Position numbers and translations under genes: made by a program
Notes under the pieces: generated by a model
Told to the model about the DNA's origin: nothing
The model's database searches: none
The model's input: only the letters and a program-made list of their open reading frames with translations
DNA from: Octopus bimaculoides
Lineage: Eukaryota
Length of the DNA stretch: 64,000 bases
Direction: 5' to 3'
Assembly: GCF_001194135.2 (NCBI RefSeq)
Contig: NC_069004.1
Span: 16,530,652 to 16,594,651, forward strand
Shown: piece by piece, positions 17,096 to 64,000 of the stretch
How positions within the stretch are numbered: the stretch's first letter is position 1
Layout: each line of letters starts with the position of its first letter

Positions 17096-17177
17096 TGCCC
17101 AGGTGAATGAGATACTAAAAATATATATATAAAAAATTTCTTTATTCCTTTGGAACACGAAATCTCAAAAGGGGAGA

Positions 17178-19048: not shown

Positions 19049-19138
19049 GCTCTTGATGGTTTTGTCTTCTTTGTCAACTGCCAAGGCATTGTAGAACATG
19101 TCTCAGAAAAGGTCTCTCTTTACCTCAAATACACGCAG
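19049..19138 (+). CDS. NCOA: NCOA exon 2, PAS-A start: ALDGFVFFVNCQGIVEHVSEKVSLYLKYTQ
   Basis: ttttcag acceptor, CAG|GTATGT donor, 90 nt, canonical bHLH-PAS ALDGF motif. Confidence 0.95.
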
Positions 19139-25489: not shown

Positions 25490-25580
25490 GAGGAACTGAT
25501 TGGGAAAAGTATCTACAACATTATCCACGTTGGTGACCATGCCCAATTTAGCGGCAAACTACTTCCTATGTCCTATGGCG
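25490..25580 (+). CDS. NCOA: NCOA exon 3, PAS-A: EELIGKSIYNIIHVGDHAQFSGKLLPMSYG
   Basis: cttttctag acceptor, G|GTAAGA donor, 91 nt, phase 0 to 1; PAS motif ELIGKSIYNIIH. Confidence 0.95.
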
Positions 25581-28226: not shown

Positions 28227-29485
28227 CAAGGGCTGGCTGAAAAGTTCAAAAGCTGACCAAAATACTTGTGGAATGTGACCAAATAAGGCTTACTTTTCAA
28301 CATAGTCCCTCTTGCAGTCCACACATATCTTCCTCCAGTGTTGCAGTACTTGGATCTCATTGATGAAGAAGTGTTCATCCCGTTGGTCAAAAAAGTCATT
28401 GGCAGCAGACATAATATCATCAACATTGTGATACTGGTTCCCAGCCAAGTGTTATTTCCTGTTGGGGAACAGCTGACAGTTAGAGGGGGCCAAATCTGGA
28501 GAAAAGGAATGAGGATCAACCATTTCAAATCCACAGTCATGCCCAGCGGTCATGGAAACCAATGACTCGTGTGCTGAAGCATTCTCCTGATGAAGACTCC
28601 TTTCATCAGTTTTACTGGTCATTTGGTCTTGATAGCTTTCTGTAACTGCCTCAGCAAGTTAGCATAGTACTCTCCATTGATGGTGTAGCCCTTTTGAAGA
28701 TAGTAAACACAATGCCTTTTGCATCCCAAAAAACTGAGGCCATCACCTTCTCTACAGAGGAAACAACCTTGGCCTTCTCTAGAGCAAGTGAGGAGAAATG
28801 TTTCCATTGCATGGAATTTCTCTGTCTCCGGCTCAAAGTAATGAAACCAACACTCATCCTGGTTTAGGAAACATTCAAGGAAATCAGCTGGATCTGTCTC
28901 AAAGAATGTCAGATTTTCCCATGATGTGATCAGCCTGATATGTTTTTGATCAAATATCAGAACACTTGGCACCCACCAAGCAGAAACCTTCATCATACCA
29001 AGTTCATTGTGCAGATTATTCTCAACTCTCTCATGAGATATGCTGATAGCATGGGCTATTTGATTTATAGTCAATCATCTGTCATCCATCAGCATGTGCT
29101 GAACATGATCAATGTTTTCTTTGATGGTGGCTGTTGCATGACATCCAGACCTTGGGTCATCTTCAGGACTCTTAAATTCAGCTGCCCACGTTTGCACTGC
29201 TGATAAAGTTGGAGTGTCATCCTCTAATGTAGCAACTATGTAAGCATGAATGTCTTTGGGAGCTAAACACTTTCTGAAAGTGCTTGATTACACTGCAATG
29301 CCAAATTTTGTCCATTTTCAAGAGAAGTTGCTACTAGTTACTTTTGAACAGTGACCTATCAGTTTACCTGGAAAGAAACAATACAATTGATAAGAAGAAG
29401 AAGAGTTGAAATTAATGCATCAAGATTTCACAGCTCTAGCATCGCTTCCTCATTGTCAGCCTATGGACTTTTCAGCACATCCTCA
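28227..29485 (-). mobile_element. full-length decayed mariner (second family)
   Basis: Roughly 31-bp imperfect TIRs; TA at 28225-28226; peptides KVSAWWVP, DECWFHYFEPE, VMASVFWDAKG and FSPDLAPSN. Confidence 0.9.
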
Positions 29486-30758: not shown

Positions 30759-30836
30759 GCTCCAGTGCTTGGCCATCAGACAACTCTGCTGCGAAAGGGA
30801 AGACTTTTTTCTGTCGGATGCTGATCAAGCCTTCAG
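30759..30836 (+). CDS. NCOA: NCOA exon 4: GSSAWPSDNSAAKGKTFFCRMLIKPS
   Basis: gttacag acceptor, CAG|GTAAAA donor, 78 nt, phase 1 to 1; TFFCRML motif. Confidence 0.92.
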
Positions 30837-31812: not shown

Positions 31813-31914
31813 GTGAAGACAGTAGTGATGATGCCCAAGTGGAACATATGCAGATATCCACTGCAGTTCAACCCTGCATTGGGGAAAAGTTTTCAGATTC
31901 TCAAGAGGATTCAG
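31813..31914 (+). CDS. NCOA: NCOA exon 5: GEDSSDDAQVEHMQISTAVQPCIGEKFSDSQEDS
   Basis: gttacag acceptor, CAG|GTAAGC donor, 102 nt, phase 1 to 1; EHMQIS resembles the YETMQC / YENMQIS segment of p160 proteins. Confidence 0.88.
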
Positions 31915-32581: not shown

Positions 32582-32705
32582 AGCGGCAGTCTTGCTTACT
32601 TTGTATAGCTAGGCGGGATAAAACGCATGATAAGATGAGTACAGCCATGAAAAAATTTACTACAAAACAGGATTTAAATGGAAAAATTATTGCCTGTGAT
32701 GCAAG
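32582..32705 (+). CDS. NCOA: NCOA exon 6, end of PAS-A and start of PAS-B: ERQSCLLCIARRDKTHDKMSTAMKKFTTKQDLNGKIIACDA
   Basis: tttttttatag acceptor, AAG|GTATGG donor, 124 nt, phase 1 to 2; CLLCIARR and FTTKQDLNGKI motifs. Confidence 0.94.
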
Positions 32706-33039: not shown

Positions 33040-34770
33040 ACAATGTATTATAGTCATGCTCCTATAATGTAGTGGGGAAAAGGTGCAAATTCTTCTGGGA
33101 GGGCAACAACAACAGTGTGTGTACAAGAATTGTGTTGCTAGCAGACAAATGAATAAAGTAATTGAAGTACTCAGTGTCCAGCAACATAATTAAACTTAGA
33201 CTTGTCATAGACAGTCCTTCTGCATGTGCACCACAACTGACAGATGAACAGAACAATCGATTTTATGAAGCTTACATACAGACAACAAATGACAGAAATC
33301 TCATTATTATGGCTGGTGACCTTAATAGACATATGATAGTTTATCCACCTTAAATGAGGCTATGAATATGGTAAAAAGAATGGAATGTTGAAGGCTCCTG
33401 AAGTTCTGTGACACAAATGACCTAACTTTTTGCATCAAGAAACTAACCTGCTGCCTGATCTCTTCCTAATCAAACACCTGAGACTTCACACTCATCAGGA
33501 AATAGGATAGACAGTTAGCTGTGAATGCTAAACTTTTCCTTGGTGAAAAATGTACCACTGAACATGACTAGAGATTAGTGACTCTAGAGTAAGGGCTAAA
33601 CATAGTCAGAAGCAGAAGACAAACTGGAGAAGGAAGATGTTGAAGCTGAAAGGTCCTGTAACCAAGAGAAGTACTAGTTGATACATATAACATAAAAGAC
33701 AGAGGATAACTAGGATTTCCTATTAAAAGCACCTGTTAAAGGTTACAGTGCAGACCCAGCTGGTGCAAAGTACATAGTACTGGCAGAAAGTAGAATTATA
33801 CACGAAACAGTCATAAAAACTAAGATATAGGTCTGGAATAACTGAAAGAAAAGGAGGAACTAAGAATGATATCAAAAAGCTAGAAGAGAAGCCAAAAGTA
33901 GGAGGTCGGCAGATGTTCTGCAATGTAATGATCAGAGGCGTGAGAAGTTTCAGATTGCAAAACAATATTCTAGAGAGAATAGACATCGTTGTAGAGAATT
34001 ATGTGCAGAATAATAACAGTGCATTTGCCATTACTGGTACTAAAAAAGAAAGAGGCATGGATGTGCTATTATATGATGTTTTTTGGGTTTTTTTAACAAG
34101 GAGAATGCATAAGAAAAAGAAAGCCTAACCTTAGTTGCCCCAACTGAGGGATCAGGCATTGAAGTTGACAGCTGTATGGTGAAGAATGCAATGTAGCATA
34201 TGATGGCTGGGAAGACAGCTGGACCATGAGGAGTAGTTGCTGAGATCTTTAAAATATCTGATAAGTTGGTTACAGCTACTTGCATAGTCATTAATGTAGT
34301 ACAGAGAAGTGTTATTTCCTATGACTGGCATAGTAAAATCCTCCTCACCATCAACAACTACAAAGGCAAAGGAGATGCACCAGAGAGAGATAAATTAATG
34401 GACCATGTTTGAAAGTTACCTAGGTTTATAGCACAACTGATTAGGAAGATATTTAGCCTTGACAGGGTAGCTCTACCTAGCTTAGTACCATAAGAGTTCC
34501 ATAGGGTATTCGTTGCAAACTATGAATGCACAAAAGTTGTTTTGGAATAACAGGTCAGTTGATGGGGGAAAAAACTTTATATATTGGCAGATGTACAGGG
34601 GGAGTTAGCAGTAACAATACACTGGAAAAAAATTCTTTCAAATGCTCAGAAGTTTCCCAAGAAGTAGGCAATAGCATTTGTTACCAAGGTGACCTAATTA
34701 GTAATGGAGGTGGATGTTCTGATAGCATAGGTGCCAGAATGCAGTAGAAAATGTCCAGTTACTTCCCCAT
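33040..34770 (+). mobile_element. decayed RTE LINE, internal fragment
   Basis: Endonuclease-like IIMAGDLNRH in ORF 33162..33353; downstream segments colinear with the 9-12.7 kb RTE in the opposite orientation. Confidence 0.7.
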
Positions 34771-35216: not shown

Positions 35217-35323
35217 TCAAATCTCAGGAAACCATAATAAATTCTCAGACCTTGTTGGACGTCGACTGCAAGATCTATGTCACAGTAGTGATGTGCCGAA
35301 TATAAAGCAACATTTGCAGGATG
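35217..35323 (+). CDS. NCOA: NCOA exon 7, PAS-B: SQISGNHNKFSDLVGRRLQDLCHSSDVPNIKQHLQD
   Basis: ttttttag acceptor, ATG|GTAAGC donor, 107 nt, phase 2 to 1; DLVG..LQDLCH..D PAS motif. Confidence 0.92.
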
Positions 35324-37377: not shown

Positions 37378-37534
37378 CTTAGTAGGGAATTGTTGAGGGT
37401 CAGAAACTGACCAAATATTTTTTGGCCCTAAAGAGAAGCTATGTTATTCTGAGGTTGCCAAGAAAGATCTCCCAAGATTGTGAAATCTAACATTTGTAAT
37501 GACTCTGTTTTAATTGAGAATTGTTCATGATTAA

Positions 37535-38664
37535 CCCTTTCGTTACTATATTTCTGACCAAAATACACCCCTCATGAGTTTCAATTAAATTCTAAAATAA
37601 TCATGAATTTAGACTAGTCTCATTAAACACCTGTAACTTCTTTATTTATCAACATATTAATGTGATATTTGGAACATAATTAAAGAAAGGGTTCTTAATC
37701 AATTCTATTGCATAATTTTTGTCTCTGGGGTACTGCTAGTGTCTCTCACATGTAAATATTGGTTCAGCTTCACGAATCGTACTCGTTCATAATACTGGAA
37801 ATATATTCATCGCCAAAAGGTTCCTGATCACTCCAGTAATTTGTTATTCTGGGTAACTGTCTAATACCCATAATAATATTTANNNNNNNNNNNNNNNNNN
37901 NNNNNNNNNNNNNNNNNNNNNNNNNNNNNNNNNNNNNNNNNNNNNNNNNNNNNNNNNNNNNNNNNNNNNNNNNNNNNNNNNNNNNNNNNNNNNNNNNNNN
38001 NNNNNNNNNNNNNNNNNNNNNNNNNNNNNNNNNNNNNNNNNNNNNNNNNNNNNNNNNNNNNNNNNNNNNNNNNNNNNNNNNNNNNNNNNNNNNNNNNNNN
38101 NNNNNNNNNNNNNNNNNNNNNNNNNNNNNNNNNNNNNNNNNNNNNNNNNNNNNNNNNNNNNNNNNNNNNNNNNNNNNNNNNNNNNNNNNNNNNNNNNNNN
38201 NNNNNNNNNNNNNNNNNNNNNNNNNNNNNNNNNNNNNNNNNNNNNNNNNNNNNNNNNNNNNNNNNNNNNNNNNNNNNNNNNNNNNNNNNNNNNNNNNNNN
38301 NNNNNNNNNNNNNNNNNNNNNNNNNNNNNNNNNNTTCTTCGATATCTCCATATCTTCTGTTGAAAAACCTTCAAATTCGGAATCACTGCTTGATAGCATG
38401 AAACTCCTCTCCATCTTCAAAGTTGAAAAAAATTAACGCCACAAAAAATGTGGAAAAAAATCTTCCAAAATTCACTAAGTTCAAATATCACGACAAACAA
38501 TGTTGGATACAATAACTCAACTGTTTGCAAAGTGAAATCAGGTGTTTTAACGAATGTACTAACGAGATTTGGGTTCAAATATACATTTAAATAACAATGA
38601 GTATGCTCGGCCGGGTTAGTCTTATGAACCAAAAAATTTTTCGGCCGGGTTAGTAACGAAAGGG
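37535..38664 (-). mobile_element. piggyBac element, internally deleted, contains gap 37883-38334
   Basis: Perfect 14-bp TIRs CCCTTTCGTTACTA / TAGTAACGAAAGGG; TTAA at 37531-37534 and 38665-38668; peptides SSSDSEFEGF and IMGIRQLPRITNYWS..RFVKLNQYLHV. Confidence 0.92.
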
Positions 38665-39178
38665 TTAAAGAGGGAATTAGACTATTTCTTTGATATGAAA
38701 AGTAATAGTGTTACTGTACTTTTAAAAAAGATAAAATGTCCATGTGCTCATTGAAACTTATTTACAAGATTTCTGTTTCTGAATCAGTGTAAAATTTGAA
38801 GAAAGCAGTGCTTTTATTAGCTTTCACAGTGCTACATATAATATTAGGACATGGACATGAATGTATTATCTCTCACTTAAACAAGTCTGTAACCTCAGTT
38901 ACAGCTAACGCACTCATGGTAATAAAAAGAAATATCAGAAAAAATGTTTATCAACCTATGGCTTTTGAATTTTGTTTGTAATGTACACTTACTGAAGTCT
39001 TGCAGCTATATGCGGAAGGGGATCTATGATTATGGACTCTGTAGTCACTGCACCTCCAATTACGTGTTTGAAAATCTTGCATATAAGGACACTAGATGTC
39101 AAGAGGAAACCTAGATCCATTAGAAGTATAACATTTGTAGTTTAAGCTCAAAACAGTACACTTTATTTTTATTTTATA

Positions 39179-40376
39179 CTAGCAGAAATACCCGGCTTTG
39201 CCCGGGTTAAAGAGAATAATGAAATCTAAAAACGCTGTCTAGACTACGCAACCATCAACTGTTAGTAGCTACGATACCATATTTCTACATTAATAACTCT
39301 CCAATCCATGCCAGCATGGAACATAGACATTAAGTGGAATGCCAGTCTCTCATCTAGGAGGGCCTTGAAATCAATGTTACCAACTGGGGACTATGTGTGT
39401 CGTAGTGATAATAAAAAGACCCAAAGGAGGTCTGCAACGAAATAATTTTACTCAACACTTTGCAAGTGAATCAGTGGAGGCAAAGATGCGTCTCATTTAC
39501 TTGACAATTTATGCACCACATTGCAGAAATCNNNNNNNNNNNNNNNNNNNNNNNNNNNNNNNNNNNNNNNNNNNNNNNNNNNNNNNNNNNNNNNNNNNNN
39601 NNNNNNNNNNNNNNNNNNNNNNNNNNNNNNNNNNNNNNNNNNNNNNNNNNNNNNNNNNNNNNNNNNNNNNNNNNNNNNNNNNNNNNNNNNNNNNNNNNNN
39701 NNNNNNNNNNNNNNNNNNNNNNNNNNNNNNNNNNNNNNNNNNNNNNNNNNNNNNNNNNNNNNNNNNNNNNNNNNNNNNNNNNNNNNNNNNNNNNNNNNNN
39801 NNNNNNNNNNNNNNNNNNNNNNNNNNNNNNNNNNNNNNNNNNNNNNNNNNNNNNNNNNNNNNNNNNNNNNNNNNNNNNNNNNNNNNNNNNNNNNNNNNNN
39901 NNNNNNNNNNNNNNNNNNNNNNNNNNNNNNNNNNNNNNNNNNNNNNNNNNNNNNNNNNNNNNNNNNNNNNNNNNNNNNNNNNNNNNNNNNNNNNNNNNNN
40001 NNNNNNNNNNNNNNNNNNNNNNNNNNNNNTCTTTCTCTCTCTCTCTTTCTCTCTCTCTCTGAAAGTATCTGTCATTACAATATCGAAATGTGATTGTTTC
40101 AGTTAGTTGAATAGTTTCATTTTTAAAGTGAAAGTATTTGACATGAGTGTTTTTGTTTCACTTTTGACACGTAATACTTAAATAGTGGAGGAGATATTAT
40201 GTTGCTGTGGGCTCGAACTCTGGAAGAAGTTAAAATTTTTTTTTGACTAAAACACAACTGGAACCCTAAGTAAGGCATCTGTAAAATTTGAATGAAATTG
40301 GTTGCGTAGTTCTCGAGTTTTAGGGATTCACACAGACAGACAGACACACACACATTCTCATTTTTATATATATAGA
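39179..40376 (-). mobile_element. non-autonomous Helitron, contains gap 39532-40029
   Basis: Minus strand begins A|TCTATATA and ends with hairpin ACCCGGGCAAAGCCGGGT, then 7 nt, then CTAG|T. Confidence 0.85.
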
Positions 40377-41571
40377 TTGCAGTTTGAGATTCAAGTGGAA
40401 AATGGGTTTGTGATCATTCAAGATGATATCAGGGGTTGAATGGTAAAGCAATCTACCAATCTTCTATTTCTAACAAAATAGTTAATTCTGACACTCTAGT
40501 GTACAGTATATATTGTAGGGCTGGTTTTCTTGTATATTTTGATGTTGTTGTTTATTAGGAGTCCATTGTGCATTACAGTGTCTACTTTCAATATGTTCCT
40601 AGTTTTATCTGTGAAGAAGCATACTTTCAAGTATCATGTAGTCATTCAGAATTTTTAGCAAGGGATTATTACAAGGCTGAAATCTTACTTTTAATAAAGT
40701 CCAATTATCATATTGATAAGGCAAACTGAAAATCCGAAGGTCTTTCATCGTGGTAAGGGACACATTCATGCTTTGAATCTGTATTTAGAAGTAGGTGTAC
40801 CAGTAATCTAGTTCTTAAAGAACTAGATTTTTTGTACATCTAGTTAATTATATCAATGTTATATCATAAAGTTTCATGGAGAGTATCTGTATATGCTTCA
40901 AGGAATTTGGGAAGGGCAGTTTTTCTATTAAGTGCTTGCTAAGACTTAACTGGAGTGAATATTAAAGTGAACAGGTGTACAAAGAAAAAATTATTCACTA
41001 TATCACATAGAATATATATTTGTAGCTTAATGCAGTTAATGCCCCCTCCCCTCCAATTATTACTCAGTTTTATAGACTCACAAATACATGCTTAATTGTA
41101 TAGGCACCCCAAGAAAGAGGAGTATTGTTTGAAAGTTGATTTCTTGTCAGTTGTTGGTAAGCTGAATTTTCATTGGATATGCCAGGTCATGTGATTGAAT
41201 TGAAGGCAGACTTATATAGATCACTGTAAAGTGTTAAGGGGTGTGGGTGAGTTGACTCTGACATTAACTTTGATAAGTAAGGGAGCTAACTCTTCAATAC
41301 ACTTGGGAATTTTTTTCCAGGTTGTTTGGTTGGAACTGAGCCAGCTGTGAAGGAAGAAGGAAATTATTTTGGATTTCTTGTTGAGGCATGATGTATAGTG
41401 TTTTAGCTGGTGAAACCAACAGTTCCCTCATCAGCTGGTTTATAAGAACGGATCCAATACTTCAAGTTAGAGTACAGCATTCATGGTCCTGAGCTCTTAT
41501 ACTTCCAAATGAATGAGACAGAGAAGTGGAGGTCTTGTTGATAGATCAAAACATAACACACACACACTCTT

Positions 41572-43453
41572 CTATATGTATAGACACCCGGCGTTGCTCG
41601 GAATTAAAATGGCATAGTTTGTATATAATATATTACAGTTATGTTGAAACAGGTGATATGGGAAAGTGCGGTATTGACAACAAAACATTTGTGGAATAAA
41701 TGCTGGGCTAATTCGACTAAGTAACATGCTATGCATCTGTTTGGAGTATTTCAGGCCCTAACCAGTCATGGAAAATTGGGGGTTGGGTTATATGATTTTA
41801 AAATGCACTGAAAAGCTGTCTTTTGCAGCAGTCGGTGCTGTTCCTAACACAAACCATCATCTTAAATTTTGATATCTCCTTTGGCTTTGATGTCCTACAT
41901 CACTCGTAAAGTCAATTTGGAGGAACTGTGGTTGTTCATTTGTGGGTAACTGGGAACTAATGAGGTGTGCCCTTGAACTTTGACATTAGCATAAATTCAT
42001 CTTTAACTATCTTCTTAGCTGCAGTAAACGATGTCATTTGAAATGCAAAGTTGTATTGTCTGATATTGTTCAGAAAATTCTTTGACTGGCTGGAAGTGCC
42101 TTCTAGAAGATCGATAAGAGGTTGAGAAGGAGCTGGTAGTGCTGACAATGTTACCTGACAACCCGAGCGGCACATACCATTTGTTTCATTTGAAAATTTT
42201 AAACTTCTACAGAAACGACAATTTGTGTTTAGCACGCTAATTTGGACAGTTATCATTTTTATAAGAATGGGATGGATCATATCTAAAAACAGCTTCAGGA
42301 GTTGTGAAGAACGAATTTGTATGTAGTCCATTTCTGAGAGCTATTCATTCTATTGGACCTCTCTGTCTAATCGTTAAAACATTGATTTAATGATCCAGCA
42401 TTCATTTGCTGATCTTGGGAAAGTCTCATCTCCCTTCTCTCTTGAGACTCCGTCTGACGTGCTGTGCTGCTGCATGCCTTTGCTGATGTTGAGAAAATTT
42501 CATCCTGCTTCTCTGTTCAGACTCTCGCCTTAGGTGTTTTACACTCGTCCTTGCTTTATACTTGTTTCTGGAGAGATTACATCTTTTCTTTGGTGGCATA
42601 TTTTTTTCAATATTGTAAACAAAAAATTATGAACATAAAAAGAAATTATACATTATTCCCTATTTTTGTAAGCAGGTGTATGTATGTAGTATGTCTTTAT
42701 TTTTGTATGCAGTATAAATTAACCAAATAGAAGCACATGTATGAACTGCTAATTTAATGGTAAATGCCACAGCAATTATTATAGATAAATTTCTTAATAA
42801 ATATATTAAGCACATGTATTAAATGTTAATTTAAGGGTAAATATGTAACTGTAAACATCTTGCAACCTTGAAACTGCTGCGATAATTATTAACTGGGAAT
42901 TGAACGGTAAATGTATATTTTTATATACCTTGGACCTGCCACCTCATTGCTTTTTATCAAGAGTTTCACCTCCAGCCGTTCGTTATGTCAGTCAATACAT
43001 TTACTGACACACTATTCTGCTGTGGTGGCCATAAAGACGGAAAGTTGCCGATGCATAATGTTGTTCACATTAGGATGTAAATTATTCATTTATTTCAAAT
43101 ATAATAGAAATAAGATGATCTTAATGTTATCACATTATAGATGATAAGCAGCTTTCTTTATTATAGTACAAATGTGACTAATTCGGCAAAACATTACTTT
43201 CATTATTGAAACATTATAACTCTCGTAATTTTGGTTGAAATTGAAAGTGTGAAACTATTTTCACTTTCTAATGAAACCTGGTCATTGTAGAGCAGTGTCT
43301 TTCAAATAACTATAGCTGGTTGTTGAGATAATGTAGAATATATGTAAACGAAAATGTAGTTTATTTGGTAGCCCAAAAATTACTGAATATTTTGATATCC
43401 TTATGTCAAAATGGGCAACCCAATTTTGGAATGCAAAAGGAACATATGCACGT

Positions 43454-43494
<41 letters not shown>

Positions 43495-44277
43495 CTCACT
43501 CGCTCTCTCTCTCTCTCACTTTTAGAACATACATAAGGTATGAAACATCAGTATTTCTCTGTCACCCGCTATCCCTGTCTTTCATCTTCTATAAAAACTT
43601 GTTTTCTGTCTGTTTCTTTCATTTGTCTCTGCCTTTTTTTCATTTTGTGTTTCTCCCTCTGATTCCATAAAATTTTATTTCAAGAGAGCAGAAATTGAAA
43701 GAGGAGAGAAGGAAAGTGAAAGATGTATATAAAACAGACGTGTGTGTGTGCATGCATACATGTGTGTGAGAGAGAGAAAGAGAGAGATTGAGTGAGTGAA
43801 GGTGTGTTGTGATGATTGATGTCTTTTAATTACACACACATAGAAAATGTGACGTCATCATCATCGTATAAAACGTTTACAATAGTTGATTTATGGAAAA
43901 GATTATAATGTTAAATTTTTGAAATGCAAATATGTGAATGGAAATTAAGTTTAGTTTGTAGCCAAAATAGTACTAAATCTTTTGATACCCCCATATGTCA
44001 AAACCGGTAACTCCGTTTTGGAATGCATAAGGAAGATATATATATATAGGACAAACTTCTTTCAAACTGAAAGTATTATCTCGCATTACAGTAGAGACGT
44101 AATACTGAAATAGTGCAAGAGATAAGAGATTGCTCTGGGCTTGCATTAGGCAAGAAGTTGAAAACTTTTTTTGGCCCATGACATTGCATGGACCCTAAGT
44201 AAGGTATGTGTAAAATTTGAATGAAATCGGTTGTGCAGCTCTCAAGTTTTAGGGATTCATATATATATATATATGGA
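41572..44277 (-). mobile_element. Helitron derivative carrying an N-terminal Rep fragment
   Basis: 5' end A|TCCATAT shares about 110 bp with the 39179-40376 element; degenerate 3' hairpin CCCGGCGTTGCTCGG; ORF 41957..42331 CRFCRSLKF..E..GMC..QVTL..P..PL..LL.G..SKNFLNNIRQYN.AFQMTSF, followed by PQFLQI. Confidence 0.8.
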
Positions 44278-50130: not shown

Positions 50131-51649
50131 ATTTCACAGAGTACCTAAAATTCATCTGCCTCACTAGGTAGGTTTTGTTGGATTGCCAGCTTTGTCACTT
50201 ACATGTAGTAGCCTATGTGGTTATCACTCTAATATTTTCTAGTTATCAGATATCTGATAGAACATACATGCATGTACACAAAGGAGTTCCTGGCTTTAAA
50301 AGTGTTGCGAAAGGCCTGGTTGGAGGCCCAACCTTCCAAGTTCTTTTACGGGACTTAATAACTGAAGAACCACTGTAGTAAGTGTGTGAAGTTTAGAGGA
50401 GAATAAGTTGAATAAAATCATAACGGATCCTCCTTGTGTGTGTGTGTGCACGTGCGCAAACATGTGCCTTGTCTTACTTTGGGCCCTCAAGTTGGGATGA
50501 GGTCGTGGGGGTGCCCTCTTGTCATATGCTATTTGATGTCTTGAGCATTATTACTCTTGGTGGATCCCATCCTTTTTTAGGTGTAACATCAGCTGAAGTC
50601 TTCCAAAAAGAGACAATTATGCTATGATGGGTCAACTGCATGTGAAGGATCATGCATATATATATATATATATACGTGTGTGTAGAGAGAGAGAGAGAGA
50701 GAGAGAGATAGATATGAAATTTACAGAAAAACAAAAGACGAAGACAGGTGTATAAACAACAAGCAGAAATATTAGTTTGATGCTCGGGAAGGTGACACTC
50801 ACGCACACACATTTGTTGCTGGTGTGTTAATATTTTGTTTCAGTGCTACTCAGATTTTTCAACCAGTACTCTGTAGACCAATTTACAGACAGTAATGTAA
50901 AGAGCAAACCAGTGAACAAATTTCAATCTCCTATTGGGATTTCTTTTGTGGACTGGTCACAGATACAGTTGCGTTTACTTCAAGTTTTTAATAATAGTAG
51001 GTCTATATGCTGTCTTTGAGAACAGTATAAGGGGTCGTACATGACATTAAAGAAATTTTAACGGAATTGAAATTAGATCATCCCCCCCCTTTTTTTTCTT
51101 CTTCTTTCCACAAAGATATTGTAAAGACCTTTAGATCTTACTAGACATACAATGTTGGCTAAAAAAAAAAAAAACCTATAGATATATTTTGTACTACATT
51201 GTTGGTATTAGGAAGGGCGTCCAGCCTTAGAAACCAGGTGGTGATAACTCTCAGAATTGTTTCACACTATCACAACTCGTCCAATTCGTGCCAACACAGA
51301 AAATAGACGTAAAATGAATATGTGTGTGTGTGTCCAGCTTCTGGCTCAAAAGCATCTTGTCTCCTCTTTCTTCCTTTTCTACTAATACAAAATAGCTTTT
51401 ATTTCTTGGGCTTCTGTCACCTCCACTCAGGCACTTCCATCCGACTCATCTCTTTTGCTCCCAACACACTTGTGTCCAGGCACGTTAATCACCACTCCCA
51501 GTCCTTCCTTTTCCAAACTGAAAACCCTCTTTAATTCCCTTCTTGCTTATATCTTTCCCACAATTTTTGGTTTATTCAAAAGGAATATTATCCGATCAGG
51601 AGGATCAGGAAAAACCATGGGTACTACCCCTTCTTCCAGACCAAGCTAG

Positions 51650-52536
51650 TCAAATAGTGTCGCTAGCGCGCATATGTGCATATGCATGTGTACGCATAAG
51701 TGCATATGAATGTGAATATGTATGTATTCAAGTGTGTGCGACTGCGTACACAGACCACATTTAGTAAGATATTTTGTCTTAAGATAGGAAAGCTATGAAG
51801 TCTAACAAAAGCATATCAGAAATGACATGATGTAATGTTTATACTTTTATTACATCCACTACTGTTCAGTTTTGAAGTTTGCCCCACTTTGCTTGTGTAT
51901 AGGTGTGTACATACGCGAACACCGTTTTGTATTATTAGTGTGCAGAATGTCTAAGGACTCATTCTCGTTGCTTCCGCCCACCTCTGCTAACGAATGCGCG
52001 CGCGCGCGCTCATATCCCACAGTTTAATGAACTCAACATTTTCACCCTGGTTTTTCATGTCTTTGAAACCTTACGAGATAGATAGATACACAGATACACA
52101 CAAACACGTACACAACCCTTGCTGTGTATATGTATTATGAAAGTGTGTTATGTAGTAGCCAACATATTTTCATGTTGCAACAAACGGCACCGGATGAACT
52201 AGGTTGTTGTTTGCACGTGACTCTTATCGACCAACCATGCGTCGGAATCCAAGTACGCATGCGTTGTTAGATTCCGCTGTTCGTCTCCTCCCACCTCGAC
52301 ACTATCCTTCTACCTCCTCACTATTTCTAACTCTTGTAACGCCTCACCTTTCGCAATTGCCACTACGTCTGCTACCACCACCTCCTCCTCTTCCTCATAA
52401 CAGTAGTGGCTGTAGTAGTAGTAGTAGTAGTAGTAGTGTCAATAGCGACACTACTATAGATGTGTCTATGTAGGGAGCTATGTAATAATATTGTGTATGT
52501 ATGTACATACATAGATGTATGCGTGTGGCAGATTAC

Positions 52537-52591
<55 letters not shown>

Positions 52592-52766
52592 CATACATAC
52601 ATACATACACGTATGCGTGTGTGTAGAATGACACTCTGCTAGATAGACGTATATGTTTTATATACGTCTGTCTTGTATAGCTCATAACATTGATACTTCT
52701 CTTTGCTTTTACTACTGGGGTGTATAAGCACATGTTTTCATACATTGAATTCTGTTAATACAAGTA

Positions 52767-52807
<41 letters not shown>

Positions 52808-54839
52808 GCTAGTACTACCACCCACTCTGATACTACTACTACTACTACTGCTGCTGCTGCTGTTTGCTACTTACCAGGAGACCTACTATCTATAACACCA
52901 ATGGCCTGCTACAACTGACTTCAGACGATCCACTTACGGCCATCAGGTTAGCAATACAAGCTTTTCGTTAGCTTTTTCATCTGGCTCTATATTTTTCTTT
53001 TTGCGTGTGTGTGTCTACACACACACACACACACACATTAAAAAACCTGGTGTATGTGTCTAAACATACATTAGGTTTGTATGTTATTTTTCATTTCATT
53101 CGATTGCTGTATGAACCCCCACACACTTATCATAACCTGTCCATGTAATGTCTCCCTACCTCCCTTCTGGCAATAATAAAGAACGAATTATCATCATCAC
53201 ATACACCCATAACAAGTGTGTGTTTTTCATACACCCATTGTCATTTCTTCCTTTGAACAGAAATTGATAGCAACACCATCAATGGCTAACAGTTTATTGA
53301 TGGCTATCAATCAGCTTATATTTTCATGCCTCGTACTACATTTTTGCTCTGGTAGTAGTAGTGCGTATGTGTATGTATGTATGTATGTATGTATCATCAT
53401 CGTATACACATATACTATACCTTCTGGTACTGCTAGTGGTGCTGTTTATGGTGCTTGTAATGGTACAATTTGCAGTAGCTGTATTTGTTGTTGGTATAAC
53501 AGCTTTGGCAGTATTAGTTAGGGGTGCGTGTGTGTGTTTTTAGTACCCTGTTTCTCGTCCCCATGAAGTCCCGTTTCTCGACACATTCGTTTATGACACT
53601 TGTTCGACATTTATTTCCACCCCCTCCTTTAACATACACATTACACCTTCCTCCTCTCTCTCTCTCTTTCAACTCTATCGTTTTTCTTGTAACACACCAA
53701 AGTCGTCATCACCAGCGTCATGGAGTTTTTTTTTAAATCTTTTTTTTTTTTGTTTTTCTTTTAGAATTTAATATATTTTCGATAGAGATTTTTTTGTGGA
53801 GAAATAGATCTGTATATACAGTACCTATTTGACACTGTGATAGAACTCATATATATAAATACACATATACAGAGTATCTGTTATAAAAGAAATGTTTATC
53901 ATCACCATTATTATTACATCCATCGCCGCCATCACGTCACCCCTACCCTTCCTCTTTTTGCTGATTGTATTTTATTGCTCGCCTATTATTACAACTGCTA
54001 CCTACCATCTACCAGGAAGATGATTATTATTATTAAACTCACTATCCTTACTTCAACCGTTACTGAAATGATTTTTTAACACAACTGCTCTTTGAACGAG
54101 CATTTTTAAATATGGTGCTGATGATGATGAACACAATAATAATAATAATAATCAATATTTGTATTATTACATGGTTGAGGTGCTCCTCCGCTTTAACCTC
54201 AACAAGAGAATGTCTATGTGGTCGTTCGGCATGCTAAAAATAGCCATAAAATCGTATCCTACTGCCTTAAATAAGAAAAGGACATATTGGATAATGTAGT
54301 CTTGCGTATCCCTAAGAAAAACGTGATGTTAGCGAGAATGTCTTTGATCATTGCTATGCTCGATCGGGGATTGACCTAGGGTTAAACAACACCAACAAAC
54401 CTCATTGATAACGCCCTTGGAAGAAGCATAAACGTCATTACAAGCCGTTTTTCCTCAACTGTAGTATTATTATTTGTTCTGGTATTCATATTTTCTGCTT
54501 ATAAATCATAGTGCATATGTTAAATCTTCCATTTTCATTTGTACTCCCACCCCAAAATGATCTAGGGATATGCGTGTGTGCTGGCCATGAATTAAACAGA
54601 AATTGTGATAGCAGTCCAGCATTAGTTTGATGTTTGAAACAACAGTTTCTTCCCCCCCCCCTCTCTAGTCTTCTTGATGGGCGTCCTTCTCTGCCCTCTA
54701 CCTACATACAACATACACCACTGTGATGGTTTAAAACTGGAGGCTTTTTAGTCTTTCAGCTCTACCATCTTTTAATTCCATTTTTATCCACCTCATGTGT
54801 GTGTGTGTGTATATATATATCTGTATGTATATATATATC

Positions 54840-54873
<34 letters not shown>

Positions 54874-55800
54874 TATATACACAAACATATACACACGCTC
54901 GCGCGTATAGACGTATATAATATACATACATTCTTCCTCACCTATTCCAGCCACGTGTTATGCAATAAGACATATCAATAACCAATTTTTTTTTTTTTTT
55001 TTTTTTTTNNNNNNNNNNTTTTTTTTTTTTTTTTTTTTGTTAATTTACTACAACCCACTGATCGATATGAAACTGCGGAAATCTTGTATGTAGTGTTGGT
55101 TATCGGTAGACGTTGCCATGTTGGATATGTTTTTATTGCAACGTGCCCGTTAGGTGGATGTTCAATACACAAACTAGCCTGCTGCTACTATCTCGACTAC
55201 TGTCATTTCTGCAATCCATAACTGCTGCTGCTGCTACTACTACTACTATAATTAATGGCTATTATATTTACAGAGGATAGATGAACGTTTATGTTTACAA
55301 ACGATAAAAGTAAAATACGTGTAATATTTTATGAAAAGATGGGGCTTCTTGAATCGTTACTCTGATTTCACGTTTGGGATTATTCAAACGAATGTTTTGA
55401 ATTTTGAATCATCGAGGAAACGTGAAACTCAGCAACGATTCAGGAAGCTTCAGCTTCTGATAAAATAATTACACGCCCGCGCGCTCATGCACACACATGT
55501 GTGTTATATATATGCATATTCTTCTTGAACTATCTTTTCGATAATGTTCGAATTTACAAAGTTCCATAGTCAGCTCTCATCTTCCAGAATTTCTTTTATC
55601 CCTTTAAATAACCCTATGGGAAGGCTCTCTCCGCCCCTTGTATGCCATTACAAACCGGAAGTTTTGGTTCATAGTATGGTATGGCACGTGCAAAAGAAAA
55701 TCTATGAACGTTCCCCCTGTGAAAATTCCATGAAATTCATTTATTTCGCATCCATGTTCGAGAATTGTGTACACGCAAAATAACTGGTACACTTTATTTA
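51650..55800 (+). promoter_or_regulatory. CpG-retaining intronic island, candidate internal promoter or enhancer
   Basis: About 34 CpG in 51661-52380 versus 4 in the equal-length 58141-58860 (hand counts); GC boxes, ETS, E-box and NRF1-like motifs; almost no long TEs. Confidence 0.6.
55009..55018. other. assembly gap inside a poly-T run (other gaps: 11818-12079, 37883-38334, 39532-40029)
   Basis: N runs in the sequence. Confidence 0.99.
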
Positions 55801-57228
55801 CAAAACTCCATTTATTATAGTGCCCACTGTATGTATTTTGTATGTCCATTTATTGCTGTTCAGAAAGAATCTCAAGGATCCATTCTTCTAGTGATGTGGA
55901 CACATAAATCTGTTCTCATTTATGAAGACATGATGTCCCAGAGAGCAATGGTTGTTTACGAAGGGAGGTAATGAGCACAAAGAATTTGTAAACCAAACTT
56001 AGCTGGAATTGCCCCAGTTTAATTTGCATATGTCCAAGTAATCTGTCACTGATTTTATGTTTGCGAGTTTTGTTTCCCTTATTGTAAAAGTCTGTTTTTA
56101 TTGAAGATTTTCTGTTGCTGGTCAACACGGAACTACTTGATTCTTCTGCATTTATTAAAGGGGTTTCAAAAAATTGAATTGTTTCAGCTTTTTAGTGTGC
56201 CTGTTCCATGTTTATCAGTATTGAATGGGATTAATTTTAAGGTAGTAATGAATTTCTTTGATATCTGTTGTAAGTCAAGATTATAGACATGCATCAACTT
56301 AGACGTTAGACAAACAGTCAACATTGAGGAAAGATATTTTATCTGACTCGCAACTGATGGTGTATATTAGATGGTTGTGTTAATGTTTATAAGTGTTTCT
56401 AATTTAAGCATTTAACACTTTTGACTGATACTTTATTTTATCAACCTCGAAGGATTTCAACTCAGAATGTTAACTCAAACAAATATTGCAAGACATTTTT
56501 CCAATGTTCTAATGATTCTATCAGCTCTCCACCTTTGTATAATAAATAACATAAAGGTCAGGATGTAAAGAAGATGGACAGTGTTCAAACAACTGCTGTT
56601 GTTTAACAATTTTTCTTGAGATTACATGCAGCATGAGGCTGCAAAATATGAAACATTTGATGCACTGCTTGTTGTGGTTGGTAAGAAAAGAATTGAGTAT
56701 AGTCTGTTAGAAATAGGAAGTGCGTTTAAGATAGTAAACTGGACATGAAAGCAGTGGTAGATGTATACATTATTATCACAAGGAGTGAAGTGCAGAAGTT
56801 GGAATATAGGTTTGAAGCTGGAATTTCTGAATAATTTTTAATTTCTGGAGTTGATAACATTATAGTCCTCTACCATGTGAATGGGTTTTAACTTTTCTTC
56901 CTTTTTTTTTCTTCTTTTTTTTTTTTGTTAATAGGGATGTAGACAGCGCCATTGAGTGAGTGTTGGCCATCTTATTTCATAAAGGTACAAGATGGAGACC
57001 ACATGTACCACCAGTTAAAGTATTACTAGATTGCAAGGCTAAAAGACTCTTAAATGAGAGGGTTTGATACTGTATTTAGCTAGCTAATCCTATCAACACT
57101 ATCTGTAGTCTGTTAGGGTTTATTTATTTATTGCAAATGTTATTCCTGTCTCGTTGACTATATTATCAGTTTGGTTTTGATGTTACAAAATAATTTACAA
57201 TTACATTTTGTTTATTTTTCATTTACAG

Positions 57229-57376
57229 TCTTACAAAATGGACAGCGCAAAAGCAATGTTTTCAGGTTCAAATTACAAGATAATCATTTTGTCAATACTC
57301 AAACTACAAGCTGTTTGTTTACAAACCCCATTAGTAATGAGGCTGAATGCATAACCTCAACACATGTTATTCTTAG
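57229..57376 (+). CDS. NCOA: NCOA exon 8, end of PAS-B: VLQNGQRKSNVFRFKLQDNHFVNTQTTSCLFTNPISNEAECITSTHVIL
   Basis: tttttcatttacag acceptor, TAG|GTAAGT donor, 148 nt, phase 1 to 2; overlaps ORF-track 57171..57380. Confidence 0.93.
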
Positions 57377-57434: not shown

Positions 57435-57640
57435 ATCGTCATCCTCATCATTTAAACTCCCACTTTCCATGCTGGCTTAGATGGTTTGACTGGGATTGGC
57501 AAGCCAGAGGGCTGCGCCAGGCTCCAGTCTGACTTGGCATGGTTTCTATGGTTGGATGCCCTTCCTAACGCCAACCACTCTGAGAGTGTAATGGGTACAT
57601 TTTCCGTGCCACCAATACGGGTTCCATTTACATGACACCA
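57435..57640 (-). mobile_element. RTE-type 3' end
   Basis: TTTCCATGCTGG..GGATGCCCTTCCTAACGCCAACCACTC, as at 20400-20520. Confidence 0.8.
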
Positions 57641-61150: not shown

Positions 61151-63597
61151 ATCTACTTGCGGTAGCTTTATTAAGTGTTTAACTATTCCTTTTATATATT
61201 TATTAATAAATCAGTATCAGTGTTTGATTTGCAGCAAAATAAAGTGTTCATATTTCAATTTCAAACCTCTCATAAAGACTTTTTAAGTTATTTTACTGAA
61301 TTTTCCAAAAAAACTTGATTATTTTCGAAATAAAATGCAACACATGGACAATATATTTAGTTAGAAATATGGATGGTTATGAAAGTGTTAAACAATGAGT
61401 TATGAAATAAGAAAAAAATATATAGTTAAAGTATATATGTTTGAATTCCTGACCTTGTAGGTAGTAATATTGAAGCTTGTTACTCAGAGGACACATTTAT
61501 ATAATGGGTTCACTGCTTTATCCCAGCTTATGTTATCTTACAAAGGAGGTATGTTCACTCTTGCAGGATTTGAGCTTAGAACAGTGAGACACTAAAACAG
61601 ATAAACTATCTAATTGTATGCTCCTCTTCAGTTTGGACAGCTAGGATCACTTATTACTACTTTGATATGTCTTGTTTCAAGCAGAATTGTGAATATTTCA
61701 TTATTGTCTACAGAATGAGTGCTGAGTAATTCCTAAGATTGATTATTTTCTAACATTTCCAGAGTTTCTGTGTGTCCACTAGCAGTTCAGTTTTTTTTTT
61801 TTTTTTCACTTCCAGTGCCAATAAGAACTTATTTAGGGTTGTGTTTCTTTCATTGCTCTAAAAAATGTTTTGTGAAGCCTTTAGATTACTTTCATGTGTT
61901 CAATTTCCAAACTTACTCCCTTCACTCTTAAAGTTCAGTGATTCAGTTGATTTCTCTCATGAAGTGGGTGTGGTTGATAAAATAAGTCGTCCTGTGATTG
62001 ACTTTCTGTCATAAAAATTTATGTTCAGTCAATATTACCACTCTATTTACAAGGTACTCCCAATCATAATGTACTGAGGTAATTTCTAAAACTTGAATTT
62101 GTTCAATGACTGTTAGCTATTTCTGACATTGAAATTAAAAACATTTCTTATAAAAGTAAATATGAACCATTCTGCTTTAACCAACATATCTCTTGCACCC
62201 ATACTCTCAATCAGCCACAAACACATAGATGACATAGTCATAGCCTTATTTTAAAACATAAAATCTTTGTCTATTTATCTCATTAGGTCTAAAGATGCAT
62301 GCCTTATGCACTATTATCACCATAACAGCATCATTTGTCTCTAGTCCTCAAATATCATGGGTCATAAATTTTCTTTTATAATAACTCCTAGTTATTTGCC
62401 GCCAGCTGTTCCTATTTTTCCTGCCTCGAGCAAAACTCATCAAAGCATATCAAAATATAGTATTATTTTAATATATCCAGGTATTTTGTGCTCTTATAAT
62501 GTCGGAACAGAGTGAACAAGGTGCTTACATCTATTCTTCAATACACTTGATGTTGGCTTAAGTTCATAGTAGCTTTCAGTTCAAATAATTAATCCAACCT
62601 TTGAATATTGTAATAACCTTGTTGAATGTGATTTCTATGCAGAATTTACATTTGTCGCTCAGTTCATATTGAGTCTTAAAAAAAAAATCCAGTCAGGTAG
62701 TTCTGATAGATATTTGCAAGTAAATTGTAACTCTTGGCAACAGCAGGACCTCACCAGAATATATCTATAGGTGGAGCTCAATTTGCTATTGGAAACTACC
62801 AGTTTATTATAGACACTGTTAAAATTTAAGTTTGAATTGTTGACTTTCGCTCTTTTCCCTGGTTTCAGAAGGTCCTCAGTCATAAATCATCATTGCAACT
62901 GGAAGTTAGTGGTTCTTATTCGTTTTCATAAATCTTGTTGGGTAACAATTTCAAGTAATTTTAATTCTTTACCAATATTGGACTCTGGCTATGTGTGTTG
63001 AGGTATTTGTTATCTGTTCTGATTATGTTGCTTCTTGTATTTCTTTCCTTATAAAGTCTTACAATACCTAATACAGTTTTTATTCCCGAAAGTGTGAGAT
63101 TTTGAAACTTTTTCAGTTTGGTTTATTGCTCTTTGTTTCTTTATTTTTTGTTATTGCCACCCAGTGTTCCTATTATGAAGGCCATGCACTATATTCTTCT
63201 TACCTTTATTTAAGACTTTGTAATTAGAACTTCCAATTTTATGTTCCTGTTCAAGACAGAAATAACCATCATTGATCAAGTCTTTAAATCTCAGACCTGA
63301 TTTTTATAAAGGAGCAACTAAGATTTTTTTTTAATACAAACAAAAGTATTTGGTAGACACTGATTTCATTGAAACCCTGTAGCTATCGTTTGGCCATCAT
63401 TAATGGTTTAGTGAAAACAGTTGAAAACTAATTTCATATAGAATAAATGTAAATTCAGTGTACTCTGTCAACCATAAGTTAATGGGATTGTTGTATTTTG
63501 TTCTCAAATCATTTACAAAGTTATAATGTTATATTGCGTGTGTTTGTGTTTGCATATTTTAAGTGATCTTTTATGTGTCTTATTTTGTCTTCTACAG

Positions 63598-64000
63598 AGA
63601 AAGTGATAAAGAGACAGATTTAAGACACCTAGGAAATGCCTTGAAAACCATCATCAACAGCAACCCCTCATACCAACATTTACAGCAACAGGATCAAAGT
63701 GGTAGTGGCATGATGCCACCAGCACCTTCCCCTTATCCAGGGGAAACTGGTTCCACTGTGAACATGAACCCGGATGGCATGGATGTACATGTTGGAAGCA
63801 ACTCAAACAGTCGACTAGGCTGGGATATTTTCAATTCACATCAACAGTCTATAGACAACAGCATGTCCAATATGTCATACGGTACCCCATCTGTTGCCGT
63901 GATGGCTATGGGGGGCTTCAATATTGCTAGCACGGCATCAAATAATTCCTGGACCAATGTGTCTACTTCTCGCACTGCTCACAATTCTCAAATGCAGAGC
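63598..64000 (+). CDS. NCOA: NCOA exon 9 (runs off the window): RESDKETDLRHLGNALKTIINSNPSYQHLQQQDQSGSGMMPPAPSP...NSQMQS
   Basis: ttttgtcttctacag acceptor; phase 2 completes the R of STHVILRE; 134 further codons with no stop to the window end; S/N/Q/M/G-rich. Confidence 0.9.

What the first reader, a model, noticed from the sequence alone, without database searches (positions are those of the whole stretch)
51650..55800. CpG island inside intron 7: candidate internal promoter for a bHLH-PAS-less NCOA/Taiman isoform
Seen: CpG density rises about 8-fold (34 vs 4 per 720 bp), long TEs nearly vanish, and core-promoter-type motifs cluster. These are an overlapping ETS/GC box CTTCCGCCC (51971-51979), CACGTGAC (52214-52221) and an NRF1-like ACGCATGCGT (52255-52264), followed by a pyrimidine-rich stretch and microsatellite-rich UTR-like sequence. 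Established knowledge: invertebrate gene bodies are methylated and lose CpG while promoters keep it. N-terminally truncated p160 proteins (human SRC-3 delta4, experimentally bHLH-deleted Taiman) behave differently from full length. Inference: transcripts starting near 52.2-52.4 kb and splicing to exon 57229 would lack bHLH, PAS-A and most of PAS-B. The first in-frame Met would be at 63710. An enhancer or an antisense nested transcript are alternatives.
Basis: partly seen in the sequence, partly recalled or inferred. Interest (0 to 1): 0.8.

Follow-up and report, generated by a model that had tools for sequence, protein, structure and literature searches.

The report
CpG-rich island inside a coactivator gene intron
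A 4-5 kb stretch that has kept its CpG dinucleotides sits in a long intron of an otherwise CpG-depleted nuclear-receptor-coactivator-like gene; it looks like an unmethylated promoter-type element, but nothing here shows that it starts a shortened version of the protein.

Summary
The island lies in a 21.9 kb intron (35324-57228) that splits the PAS-B domain of a bHLH-PAS, p160/NCOA-like gene. I rebuilt nine exons of that gene as one open frame. The island is single-copy in the window and four times richer in microsatellites. It has no transposon domain, no protein homologue, no RNA family above threshold and no terminal repeats. The N gap sits inside a poly-T run and breaks no reading frame.

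New: a second, tighter group of the same motifs (GC box, perfect ETS site, E-box within 60 bp) lies at the 3' edge, 55631-55690, where GC skew changes sign.

Best reading: a germline-unmethylated, promoter-type island. Which transcript it drives is unknown. The proposed bHLH-PAS-less protein is weakened by six out-of-frame AUGs before the first in-frame Met. The first of them has a strong context and opens a 38-codon upstream reading frame. I could obtain no methylation, transcript or cross-species data. This is a plausible, ordinary kind of candidate, still untested.

The parts
51650..55800 (.). Core of the CpG-undepleted island (shoulders of intermediate CpG o/e at 50200-51650 and 55800-56500)
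   Evidence: 114 CpG, o/e 0.84 vs 0.21 outside at equal G+C. Single copy in the window. No Pfam domain or protein homologue. Microsatellites 5.3 per kb.
51971..52264 (.). Motif cluster A: ETS/GC box CTTCCGCCC (51971-51979), (GC)7 (51996-52009), E-box CACGTGAC (52214-52221), NRF1-like palindrome ACGCATGCGT (52255-52264)
   Evidence: Read. Counts against 500 dinucleotide-preserving shuffles of the island: each motif is individually marginal (0.004-0.1).
52177..52406 (.). The only stretch that meets the classical CpG-island criteria (200-bp windows with G+C >= 0.5 and o/e >= 0.6)
   Evidence: 31 passing 200-bp windows, listed starts from 52177. The end, 52406, assumes those starts are consecutive. 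No 500-bp window passes anywhere.
52270..52400 (+). C/T-rich tract after cluster A, followed by (GTA)8, (TA)n, (TAA)11, (TAC)6(TGC)4 arrays up to ~52860
52944..52952 (+). Best candidate + strand splice donor downstream of cluster A (CAG|GTTAGC, G of GT at 52947)
   Evidence: Approximate donor score 8.2, within the range of the gene's real donors (7.0-10.3). Purely a consensus match.
54986..55038 (.). Poly-T run T23-N10-T20 holding the assembly gap 55009-55018
   Evidence: No target-site duplication between its left flank and 55.05-57.4 kb.
55340..55455 (.). Long imperfect inverted repeat (hairpin, ~35-bp arms) inside the most CpG-dense 300 bp (55301-55600: 14 CpG, o/e 1.53)
   Evidence: DNA fold -29.8 kcal/mol, z = -6.6 vs 200 shuffles. 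Unique in the window. Only sub-threshold Rfam matches.
55631..55690 (.). Motif cluster B (new): GC box CCGCCC (55631), full ETS consensus CCGGAAGT (55655), E-box CACGTG (55685) within 60 bp, at the 3' edge of the island where GC skew changes sign
   Evidence: The trio falls within 60 bp in 0.03% of 3000 dinucleotide shuffles, and none occurs in the other 58 kb. GC skew.
35217..35323 (+). Exon 7 (in-window count), middle of PAS-B; its donor opens the 21.9 kb intron that holds the island
   Evidence: AG/GT flanks and correct phases. Similar to homologues. Joined frame is open.
57229..57376 (+). Exon 8, last ~49 residues of PAS-B. It carries five out-of-frame ATGs; the first (57238, AAAATGG) opens a 38-codon uORF
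63598..64000 (+). Exon 9 (runs off the window). First in-frame ATG at 63710, preceded by one more out-of-frame ATG at 63636
   Evidence: 97% identical ORF in WGS contigs of a related species.

Best explanation
The stretch is a germline-unmethylated, promoter-type island inside an intron of a gene whose body is otherwise methylated.

Shown: the gene body, with its introns and the transposon relics in them, has lost about 80% of its CpGs. A 4-5 kb unique, transposon-free, microsatellite-rich block has kept them. At each edge of the block lies a group of CpG-containing binding-site motifs of the housekeeping-promoter type (ETS, GC box, E-box, plus an NRF1-like palindrome at the 5' edge).

Inferred from established knowledge: methylated CpGs decay to TpG. 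In octopus and other invertebrates methylation covers the bodies of a subset of genes and spares their start sites. Gene-body methylation suppresses internal initiation. The block has therefore been kept free of methylation in the germ line for a long time, most simply because factors occupy it and transcription starts in it.

Inferred, weaker: the sign change of GC skew and the tight 3' motif group point to ~55.6-55.7 kb as an initiation zone at least as likely as 52.2-52.4 kb, possibly firing in both directions.

The product is not determined. My split within this explanation is about 0.2 for sense transcripts that splice into exon 57229 and about 0.25 for an antisense or nested non-coding transcript.
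For: CpG o/e 0.84 vs 0.21 at equal G+C, P ~ 5e-34, with graded rather than sharp borders. Transposon relics elsewhere in the same gene body are CpG-depleted (o/e 0.1-0.56), so intronic sequence here normally decays. In the CpG-richest blocks TpG/CpA o/e is 1.07-1.16, against 1.32 outside.

No transposon domain, protein homologue, RNA family, tRNA, LTR/TIR or target-site duplication was found. Two ETS + GC-box + E-box groups lie in the island and none in the other 58 kb; two or more such groups occur in 0.03% of dinucleotide shuffles. GC skew is negative over 51-55.7 kb and positive over 55.75-57.25 kb.

Literature: in Octopus bimaculoides methylation clusters on the bodies of ~14,000 genes, and one large class lacks it at the TSS (PMC9476566). 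Orphan intragenic CpG islands of mammals often mark promoters (PMC2944787). Gene-body methylation suppresses intragenic initiation in a cnidarian (PMC13345969).
Against: There is no direct evidence of hypomethylation, open chromatin or any 5' end. Each motif alone is only marginally enriched (P 0.004-0.1 with about 20 motifs tried), and the trio was defined after looking at the sequence. No cephalopod core-promoter model was available. GC-skew rules come from mammals, and runs of comparably negative skew also occur at transposon relics (9-12 kb). G+C is only 36.5%, and only ~230 bp meet the classical island criteria. Conservation could not be tested. The organism was not identified.
Confidence: 0.45

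Rival explanations
1. A sense start at ~52.2-52.4 kb gives a non-coding first exon that splices to exon 57229. Translation then starts at Met 63710 and yields a p160 coactivator without bHLH, PAS-A and PAS-B. This is a sub-case of the best explanation.
For: Cluster A and the only classical CpG-island stretch lie at 51971-52406. A usable donor (CAG|GTTAGC) lies at 52947. The in-frame ATG at 63710 has a purine at -3. N-terminally truncated p160 isoforms exist and act differently (SRC-3 delta3/delta4, PMC8124743).
Against: Six out-of-frame AUGs lie between 57229 and 63710; the first has a strong context and a 38-codon uORF, besides any in a microsatellite-laden leader. No in-phase ATG-bearing first exon was found. 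The putative first exon would be C/U-rich with negative GC skew. Cluster B is nearer to the exon. The transcript would carry half a PAS-B coding segment to no purpose. The known truncated isoforms arise by exon skipping.
Confidence: 0.15
2. A regulatory element that does not start stable transcripts: an intronic enhancer cluster, an insulator or a Polycomb-type non-methylated island controlling the host gene or a neighbour.
For: CpG retention and transcription-factor-type motifs. Freedom from transposons. A location in the long intron of a developmental and hormone-signalling gene.
Against: From general knowledge of vertebrate methylomes, enhancer hypomethylation is usually short, partial and somatic. 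That would not preserve CpGs over 4-5 kb in the germ line. The motif types are those of housekeeping promoters.
Confidence: 0.2
3. Young or methylation-exempt sequence without function: a recent insertion or duplication (for example a retroposed copy on the - strand ending in the poly-A that reads as poly-T at 54986-55038), or microsatellite-driven sequence whose CpGs have simply not decayed yet.
For: A pure homopolymer of at least 43 T interrupted by the gap. Transposons in octopus are CpG-dense and mostly unmethylated (PMC9476566). Another zone at 37.4-43.9 kb with a Helitron-like ORF reaches o/e 0.43-0.78. Extreme microsatellite density.
Against: No target-site duplication, LTR or TIR. No transposon or other protein domain or homologue. 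Single copy in the window. Graded borders. o/e exceeds every recognisable transposon relic in the same gene body. A - strand retrocopy ending at the poly-A would explain only the right-hand ~1 kb.
Confidence: 0.15
4. Assembly artefact: sequence from another locus joined in at the gap, or collapsed microsatellite sequence.
For: An N gap lies inside the island. Three other gaps are in the window, two of them in this intron.
Against: Both sides of the gap are the same poly-T run and the same CpG-rich, microsatellite-rich composition. G+C equals the local background. CpG content grades into the flanks on both outer borders.
Confidence: 0.05

Closest known systems
Orphan (intragenic) CpG islands of mammals that act as alternative or novel promoters (Illingworth et al. 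2010, PMC2944787; PMC5927659)
   Same: A CpG-preserved block inside a transcription unit, away from the annotated start, with promoter-type motifs. It is presumed to be kept unmethylated in the germ line.
   Different: G+C is 36.5%, not above 50%; only ~230 bp pass the classical criteria. The genome background is a mosaic invertebrate-type methylome, not a globally methylated one. No CAP-seq, H3K4me3 or TSS evidence is available here.
Unmethylated TSS regions of gene-body-methylated genes in Octopus bimaculoides (methylation pattern 'MP2', Macchi et al. 2022, PMC9476566)
   Same: A sharp contrast between a methylated (here: CpG-depleted) gene body and an unmethylated (here: CpG-preserved) patch.
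   Different: The patch is internal, 22 kb into an intron that splits the PAS-B domain, not at the annotated 5' end. Methylation is inferred from sequence only. The species of the window was not established.
SRC-3 delta4 / delta3 (AIB1-delta4), N-terminally truncated human p160 coactivator (PMC8124743)
   Same: It would give a p160 protein lacking the bHLH-PAS region, translated from an internal Met.
   Different: The human isoforms arise by exon skipping from the normal promoter, not from an internal promoter. Here no transcript is shown, and six upstream out-of-frame AUGs stand before the internal Met.
Intragenic initiation sites normally silenced by gene-body methylation (Nematostella, PMC13345969)
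   Same: It follows the logic that unmethylated DNA inside a gene body is permissive for initiation.
   Different: Those sites are mostly embedded transposons that fire only after experimental loss of methylation. This block is transposon-free and appears constitutively exempt.

Membership tests
Classical CpG island (Gardiner-Garden & Frommer) | Length >= 200 bp with CpG observed/expected >= 0.6 | tested here: met
   o/e 0.84 over 4.15 kb
Classical CpG island (Gardiner-Garden & Frommer) | G+C >= 50% | tested here: not met
   G+C is 0.365 for the island. Only the 200-bp windows starting near 52177 (about 52177-52406) reach 0.50-0.51, and no 500-bp window passes.
Non-methylated, TSS-associated island of a mosaic invertebrate methylome | CpG preserved against CpG-depleted, methylated flanks | tested here: met
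   o/e 0.84 vs 0.21, P ~ 5e-34
Non-methylated, TSS-associated island of a mosaic invertebrate methylome | Unmethylated in bisulfite or nanopore data from germ line or embryo | not testable with these tools
   No methylation data were reachable. The species is unidentified.
Non-methylated, TSS-associated island of a mosaic invertebrate methylome | Capped 5' ends, H3K4me3 or accessibility | not testable with these tools
   No transcript contig covering the island was found. DNA scans of metagenome contigs found nothing.
Orphan intragenic CpG-island promoter | Lies inside a transcription unit, away from its 5' end | tested here: met
   It lies between exons 35217-35323 and 57229-57376 of one open frame. 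PAS_11 spans both sides.
Orphan intragenic CpG-island promoter | Conserved in related species | tested here: inconclusive
   The only related genomic contigs retrievable cover 62.8-64.0 kb (86% identity in the intron). Nothing was retrieved for the island.
p160 / NCOA / Taiman coactivator gene (host) | bHLH-PAS N-terminus with an NCOA-type PAS-A/PAS-B | tested here: met
   PAS_11 6.6e-29, plus PAS, PAS_3 and PAS_9. Best hits are bHLH-PAS proteins, including Limulus 'nuclear receptor coactivator 2-like' at 60% identity over PAS-A. NCOA1 PAS-B structures match at ~3e-6. The bHLH exon itself is outside the window.
p160 / NCOA / Taiman coactivator gene (host) | LXXLL receptor-interaction boxes and C-terminal activation domains | not testable with these tools
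   They lie downstream of the window's end.
N-terminally truncated p160 isoform (SRC-3 delta4-like) | A transcript that skips the bHLH-PAS exons and an accessible internal start codon | tested here: inconclusive
   An in-frame ATG exists at 63710, but six out-of-frame ATGs precede it from 57238 on. No transcript evidence.
Transposon or retrocopy insertion | Transposon protein domains, terminal repeats or target-site duplication, multiple copies | tested here: not met
   No Pfam hit at E <= 0.1 and no homologue in 5.8 billion proteins for the island ORFs. No LTR, TIR or TSD. Single copy in the window. Genome-wide copy number is not testable.

The most novel reading that the evidence does not exclude
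A p160 nuclear-receptor coactivator gene of a mollusc carries an evolutionarily maintained, germline-unmethylated internal promoter in the intron that splits PAS-B. It would produce a bHLH-PAS-less coactivator, or a regulatory sense/antisense RNA pair. That reaches by promoter choice what human SRC-3 delta4 reaches by exon skipping.
Probability: 0.15. Interest if true: 0.5.

Novelty: new member of a known kind. Interest (0 to 1): 0.3.

Why it matters
If the island is an active internal promoter, it would be a worked example that sequence alone (local CpG retention inside a CpG-depleted gene body) can find alternative start sites in poorly annotated mollusc genomes. It would also suggest that removing the bHLH-PAS module of p160 coactivators is a recurrent way to change their function. 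If it is only a regulatory patch or young sequence, it remains a useful landmark for annotating this gene but is not surprising. Either way, existing or routine data (bisulfite or nanopore methylation, Iso-Seq, CAGE) can decide the claim.

Tried and rejected
1. Orthologous or transcript sequence through protein look-ups.
- The exon 8+9 peptide found only WGS contigs of a related species, covering 62.8-64.0 kb.
- A 1432-aa concatenate of all non-repetitive island ORFs found nothing among 8000 candidates.
- The spliced PAS region found distant homologues only.
- All three protein searches are therefore spent and no comparison of the island was possible.

2. Two exact-match DNA scans of metagenome contigs with the cores of clusters B and A: 0 hits.

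3. Identifying the related species from its run accessions in the literature: no paper.

4. Rfam at a permissive threshold. Only microsatellite-driven or hairpin-driven miRNA-family matches appeared, far below the gathering scores. Rejected as RNA genes. No tRNA.

5. Retrocopy idea for the poly-T (poly-A on the - strand): no target-site duplication and no clear canonical AATAAA nearby. Kept only as a minor rival.

6. A candidate 'exon' at 33904-33948, found with a probe written from memory, proved to be a transposon fragment. The true exon 7 is 35217-35323.

7. The human NCOA1 probe from memory was used only to locate exons. All exons were then confirmed with database proteins and Pfam.

8. 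ATG-bearing alternative first exons in phase with exon 8: only microsatellite-encoded or 3-7 codon candidates. Rejected.

9. Inverted-repeat and tblastx screens of the island returned only TA/TG microsatellite matches.

10. Intra-window repeat coverage does not single out the island, because several other stretches also score zero.

It was replaced by scanning the ORF concatenates.
Full report
**Observation**

The window is AT-rich (G+C 0.36) and strongly CpG-depleted. Outside 50400-56160 the CpG observed/expected ratio is 0.21 (387 CpG in 57 kb). At the outside rate 28 CpGs are expected, a Poisson P of about 5e-34.

The largest CpG count of any 720-bp window in the 64 kb is 34, starting at 51648. 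The outside bins have a median of 4 and a maximum of 12.

The island is patchy. Peaks lie at 51.7-52.3, 53.5-54.4 and 54.7-55.6 kb, with o/e up to 1.5. Troughs coincide with microsatellites. The shoulders are graded over 50.2-51.65 and 55.8-56.5 kb.

The three motifs are at the stated positions. Microsatellites are four to five times denser than in the rest of the window: 5.3 against 1.27 arrays per kb, and 9.9% against 2% of bases.

**The gap**

The gap 55009-55018 lies inside a homopolymer, T23-N10-T20 at 54986-55038. Both sides have the same composition (o/e 0.98 and 0.93). No reading frame crosses it, so the question of frame does not arise. The simplest reading is an unsized poly-T. Physical continuity still needs a spanning long read.

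**Surroundings: the host gene**

I located exons with a probe written from memory and then confirmed them with database proteins and Pfam. Nine + strand exons have AG/GT borders:
- 4213-4313
- 19049-19138
- 25490-25580
- 30759-30836
- 31813-31914
- 32582-32705
- 35217-35323
- 57229-57376
- 63598 to the end of the window

They join into one frame without a stop.

The product has PAS-A and a complete PAS_11 domain (E 6.6e-29). It resembles bHLH-PAS proteins of an annelid, a bivalve, a brine shrimp and a horseshoe crab. The last is named 'nuclear receptor coactivator 2-like' by its source. NCOA1 PAS-B structures match at about 3e-6. An NCOA/Taiman assignment is reasonable. It is not complete, because the bHLH exon and the LXXLL and activation regions lie outside the window.

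Exon 8 encodes only the last ~49 residues of PAS-B.

I could not verify that the organism is a cephalopod. The only near-identical sequences are short WGS contigs from unnamed runs: 97% protein identity in exon 9 and 86% DNA identity in intron 8.

**What the island is not**

- It is single-copy within the window.
- It has no LTRs, terminal inverted repeats or target-site duplication around the poly-T.
- None of its ORFs has a Pfam domain at E <= 0.1 or a homologue among 5.8 billion proteins.
- No Rfam family reaches its threshold and there is no tRNA.

By contrast, relics of reverse transcriptase and DDE transposases are found elsewhere in the gene. All of them are CpG-depleted (o/e 0.1-0.56). 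Sequence embedded in this gene body therefore normally loses its CpGs.

**New features**

(a) A second motif group lies at the 3' edge: GC box CCGCCC at 55631, the full ETS consensus CCGGAAGT at 55655 and E-box CACGTG at 55685, all within 60 bp. Such a trio within 60 bp occurs in 0.03% of 3000 dinucleotide-preserving shuffles of the island. Two trios within 300 bp also occur in 0.03%. None occurs in the other 58 kb. The caveat is that each motif alone is only marginally enriched (P 0.004-0.1 with about 20 motifs tried), and the trio was defined after inspection.

(b) The + strand of the island is pyrimidine-rich. GC skew is -0.13 to -0.19 in four consecutive 1-kb bins, against an outside mean of +0.02 (sd 0.11). 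It turns positive at about 55.75 kb and stays so to 57.25 kb.

(c) Only about 52177-52406 meets the classical CpG-island criteria.

(d) A long hairpin at 55340-55455 (z = -6.6) lies in the most CpG-dense 300 bp.

**Mechanism**

Established knowledge: methylated CpGs decay. In Octopus bimaculoides methylation is concentrated on the bodies of about 14,000 genes and is absent from the TSS in a large class of them (PMC9476566). In mammals, orphan intragenic CpG islands frequently mark promoters (PMC2944787). In a cnidarian, gene-body methylation suppresses internal initiation (PMC13345969).

Inference: a 4-5 kb block with CpG o/e near 1, inside a body at 0.2, has been exempt from germ-line methylation for a long time. 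The most economical cause is occupancy by factors and transcription initiation, that is, a promoter-type non-methylated island (confidence 0.45).

The product cannot be decided from sequence. Within this explanation I give about 0.2 to sense transcripts entering exon 8 and about 0.25 to an antisense or nested non-coding transcript. The skew switch and the tight 3' cluster make ~55.6-55.7 kb at least as good a candidate start as 52.2-52.4 kb.

The first in-frame Met after exon 8 is indeed at 63710. A protein starting there would lack all of PAS-B. However, any transcript entering exon 8 carries five out-of-frame AUGs in that exon and one more in exon 9. The first (57238) is in an AAAATGG context and opens a 38-codon upstream frame that ends within exon 8. 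Reinitiation is possible, but this is not the layout of an efficiently translated isoform.

No ATG-bearing alternative first exon in the correct phase was found. The cited human precedent, SRC-3 delta4, arises by exon skipping, not from an internal promoter (PMC8124743).

**Rivals**

- A non-initiating regulatory element (0.2).
- Young or methylation-exempt neutral sequence, including a possible - strand retrocopy ending at the poly-A (0.15).
- An assembly artefact at the gap (0.05).

**What could not be done**

No methylation, chromatin, transcript-end or cross-species data for the island could be reached. The functional claim is therefore untested.

**Verdict**

The specific start site, the splice into 57229 and the truncated protein are unsupported and somewhat disfavoured. 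The kind of element is well known, so I score this a new member of a known kind, interest 0.3.

Noticed in passing
window 55340-55455: A long imperfect inverted repeat (~35-bp arms, structured 45-nt apical part), DNA fold -29.8 kcal/mol, z = -6.6, unique in the window, in the most CpG-dense part of the island. It could be a small-RNA precursor or a MITE-like palindrome. Only sub-threshold plant-miRNA Rfam matches were found.
   Followed up: partly
window 57238-57354 and 63636: Exon 8 carries five out-of-frame ATGs. The first is in an AAAATGG context and opens a 38-codon reading frame. One more out-of-frame ATG precedes the first in-frame ATG (63710) in exon 9. These matter only for transcripts that start downstream of the normal start codon.
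   Followed up: yes
window 31813-31914: This exon (GEDSSDDAQVEHMQISTAVQPCIGEKFSDSQEDS, the 'QYENMQIS' segment of homologues) is 102 nt long. Joining exon 30759-30836 directly to 32582-32705 also stays in frame, so it could be a cassette exon.
   Followed up: partly
window 37400-43900: A second zone of moderately raised CpG o/e (0.43-0.78) lies in the same intron, beside two assembly gaps (37883-38334, 39532-40029) and a Helitron-like ORF on the - strand (41960-42340). It is probably younger transposon sequence.
   Followed up: no
window 10432-10920(-), 20062-20295(-), 28622-29074(-), 14300-17100(+), 1998-2327(+): Degraded transposon ORFs lie in the introns: RVT_1, DDE_3 and Transposase_1 at sub-threshold Pfam scores, and pol-like and mariner-like ORFs judged by eye. 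All are CpG-depleted to o/e 0.1-0.56.
   Followed up: partly
window 51201-51236 and 57540-57575: A 36-bp inverted match (86% identity), 'aggaagggcgtccagccttagaaaccaggt...', lies on either side of the island. It looks like a fragment of a short interspersed repeat and is the only non-microsatellite intra-window match of the island region.
   Followed up: no
L001-L005 (Logan contigs of runs SRR11869384-94) vs window 62828-63998: WGS contigs of an unidentified close relative align at ~86% DNA identity across intron 8 and 97% protein identity in exon 9. This gives a neutral-divergence baseline for future conservation tests.
   Followed up: partly
window 52412-52860, 54023-54152, 55222-55248: Eight of the 22 perfect microsatellites in the island are trinucleotide arrays: (GTA)8, (TAA)11, (TAC)6(TGC)4, (ATT)4, (TGA)4, (AAT)6, (CTG)4(CTA)5. 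That is an unusual share for non-coding sequence, and it is unexplained.
   Followed up: no
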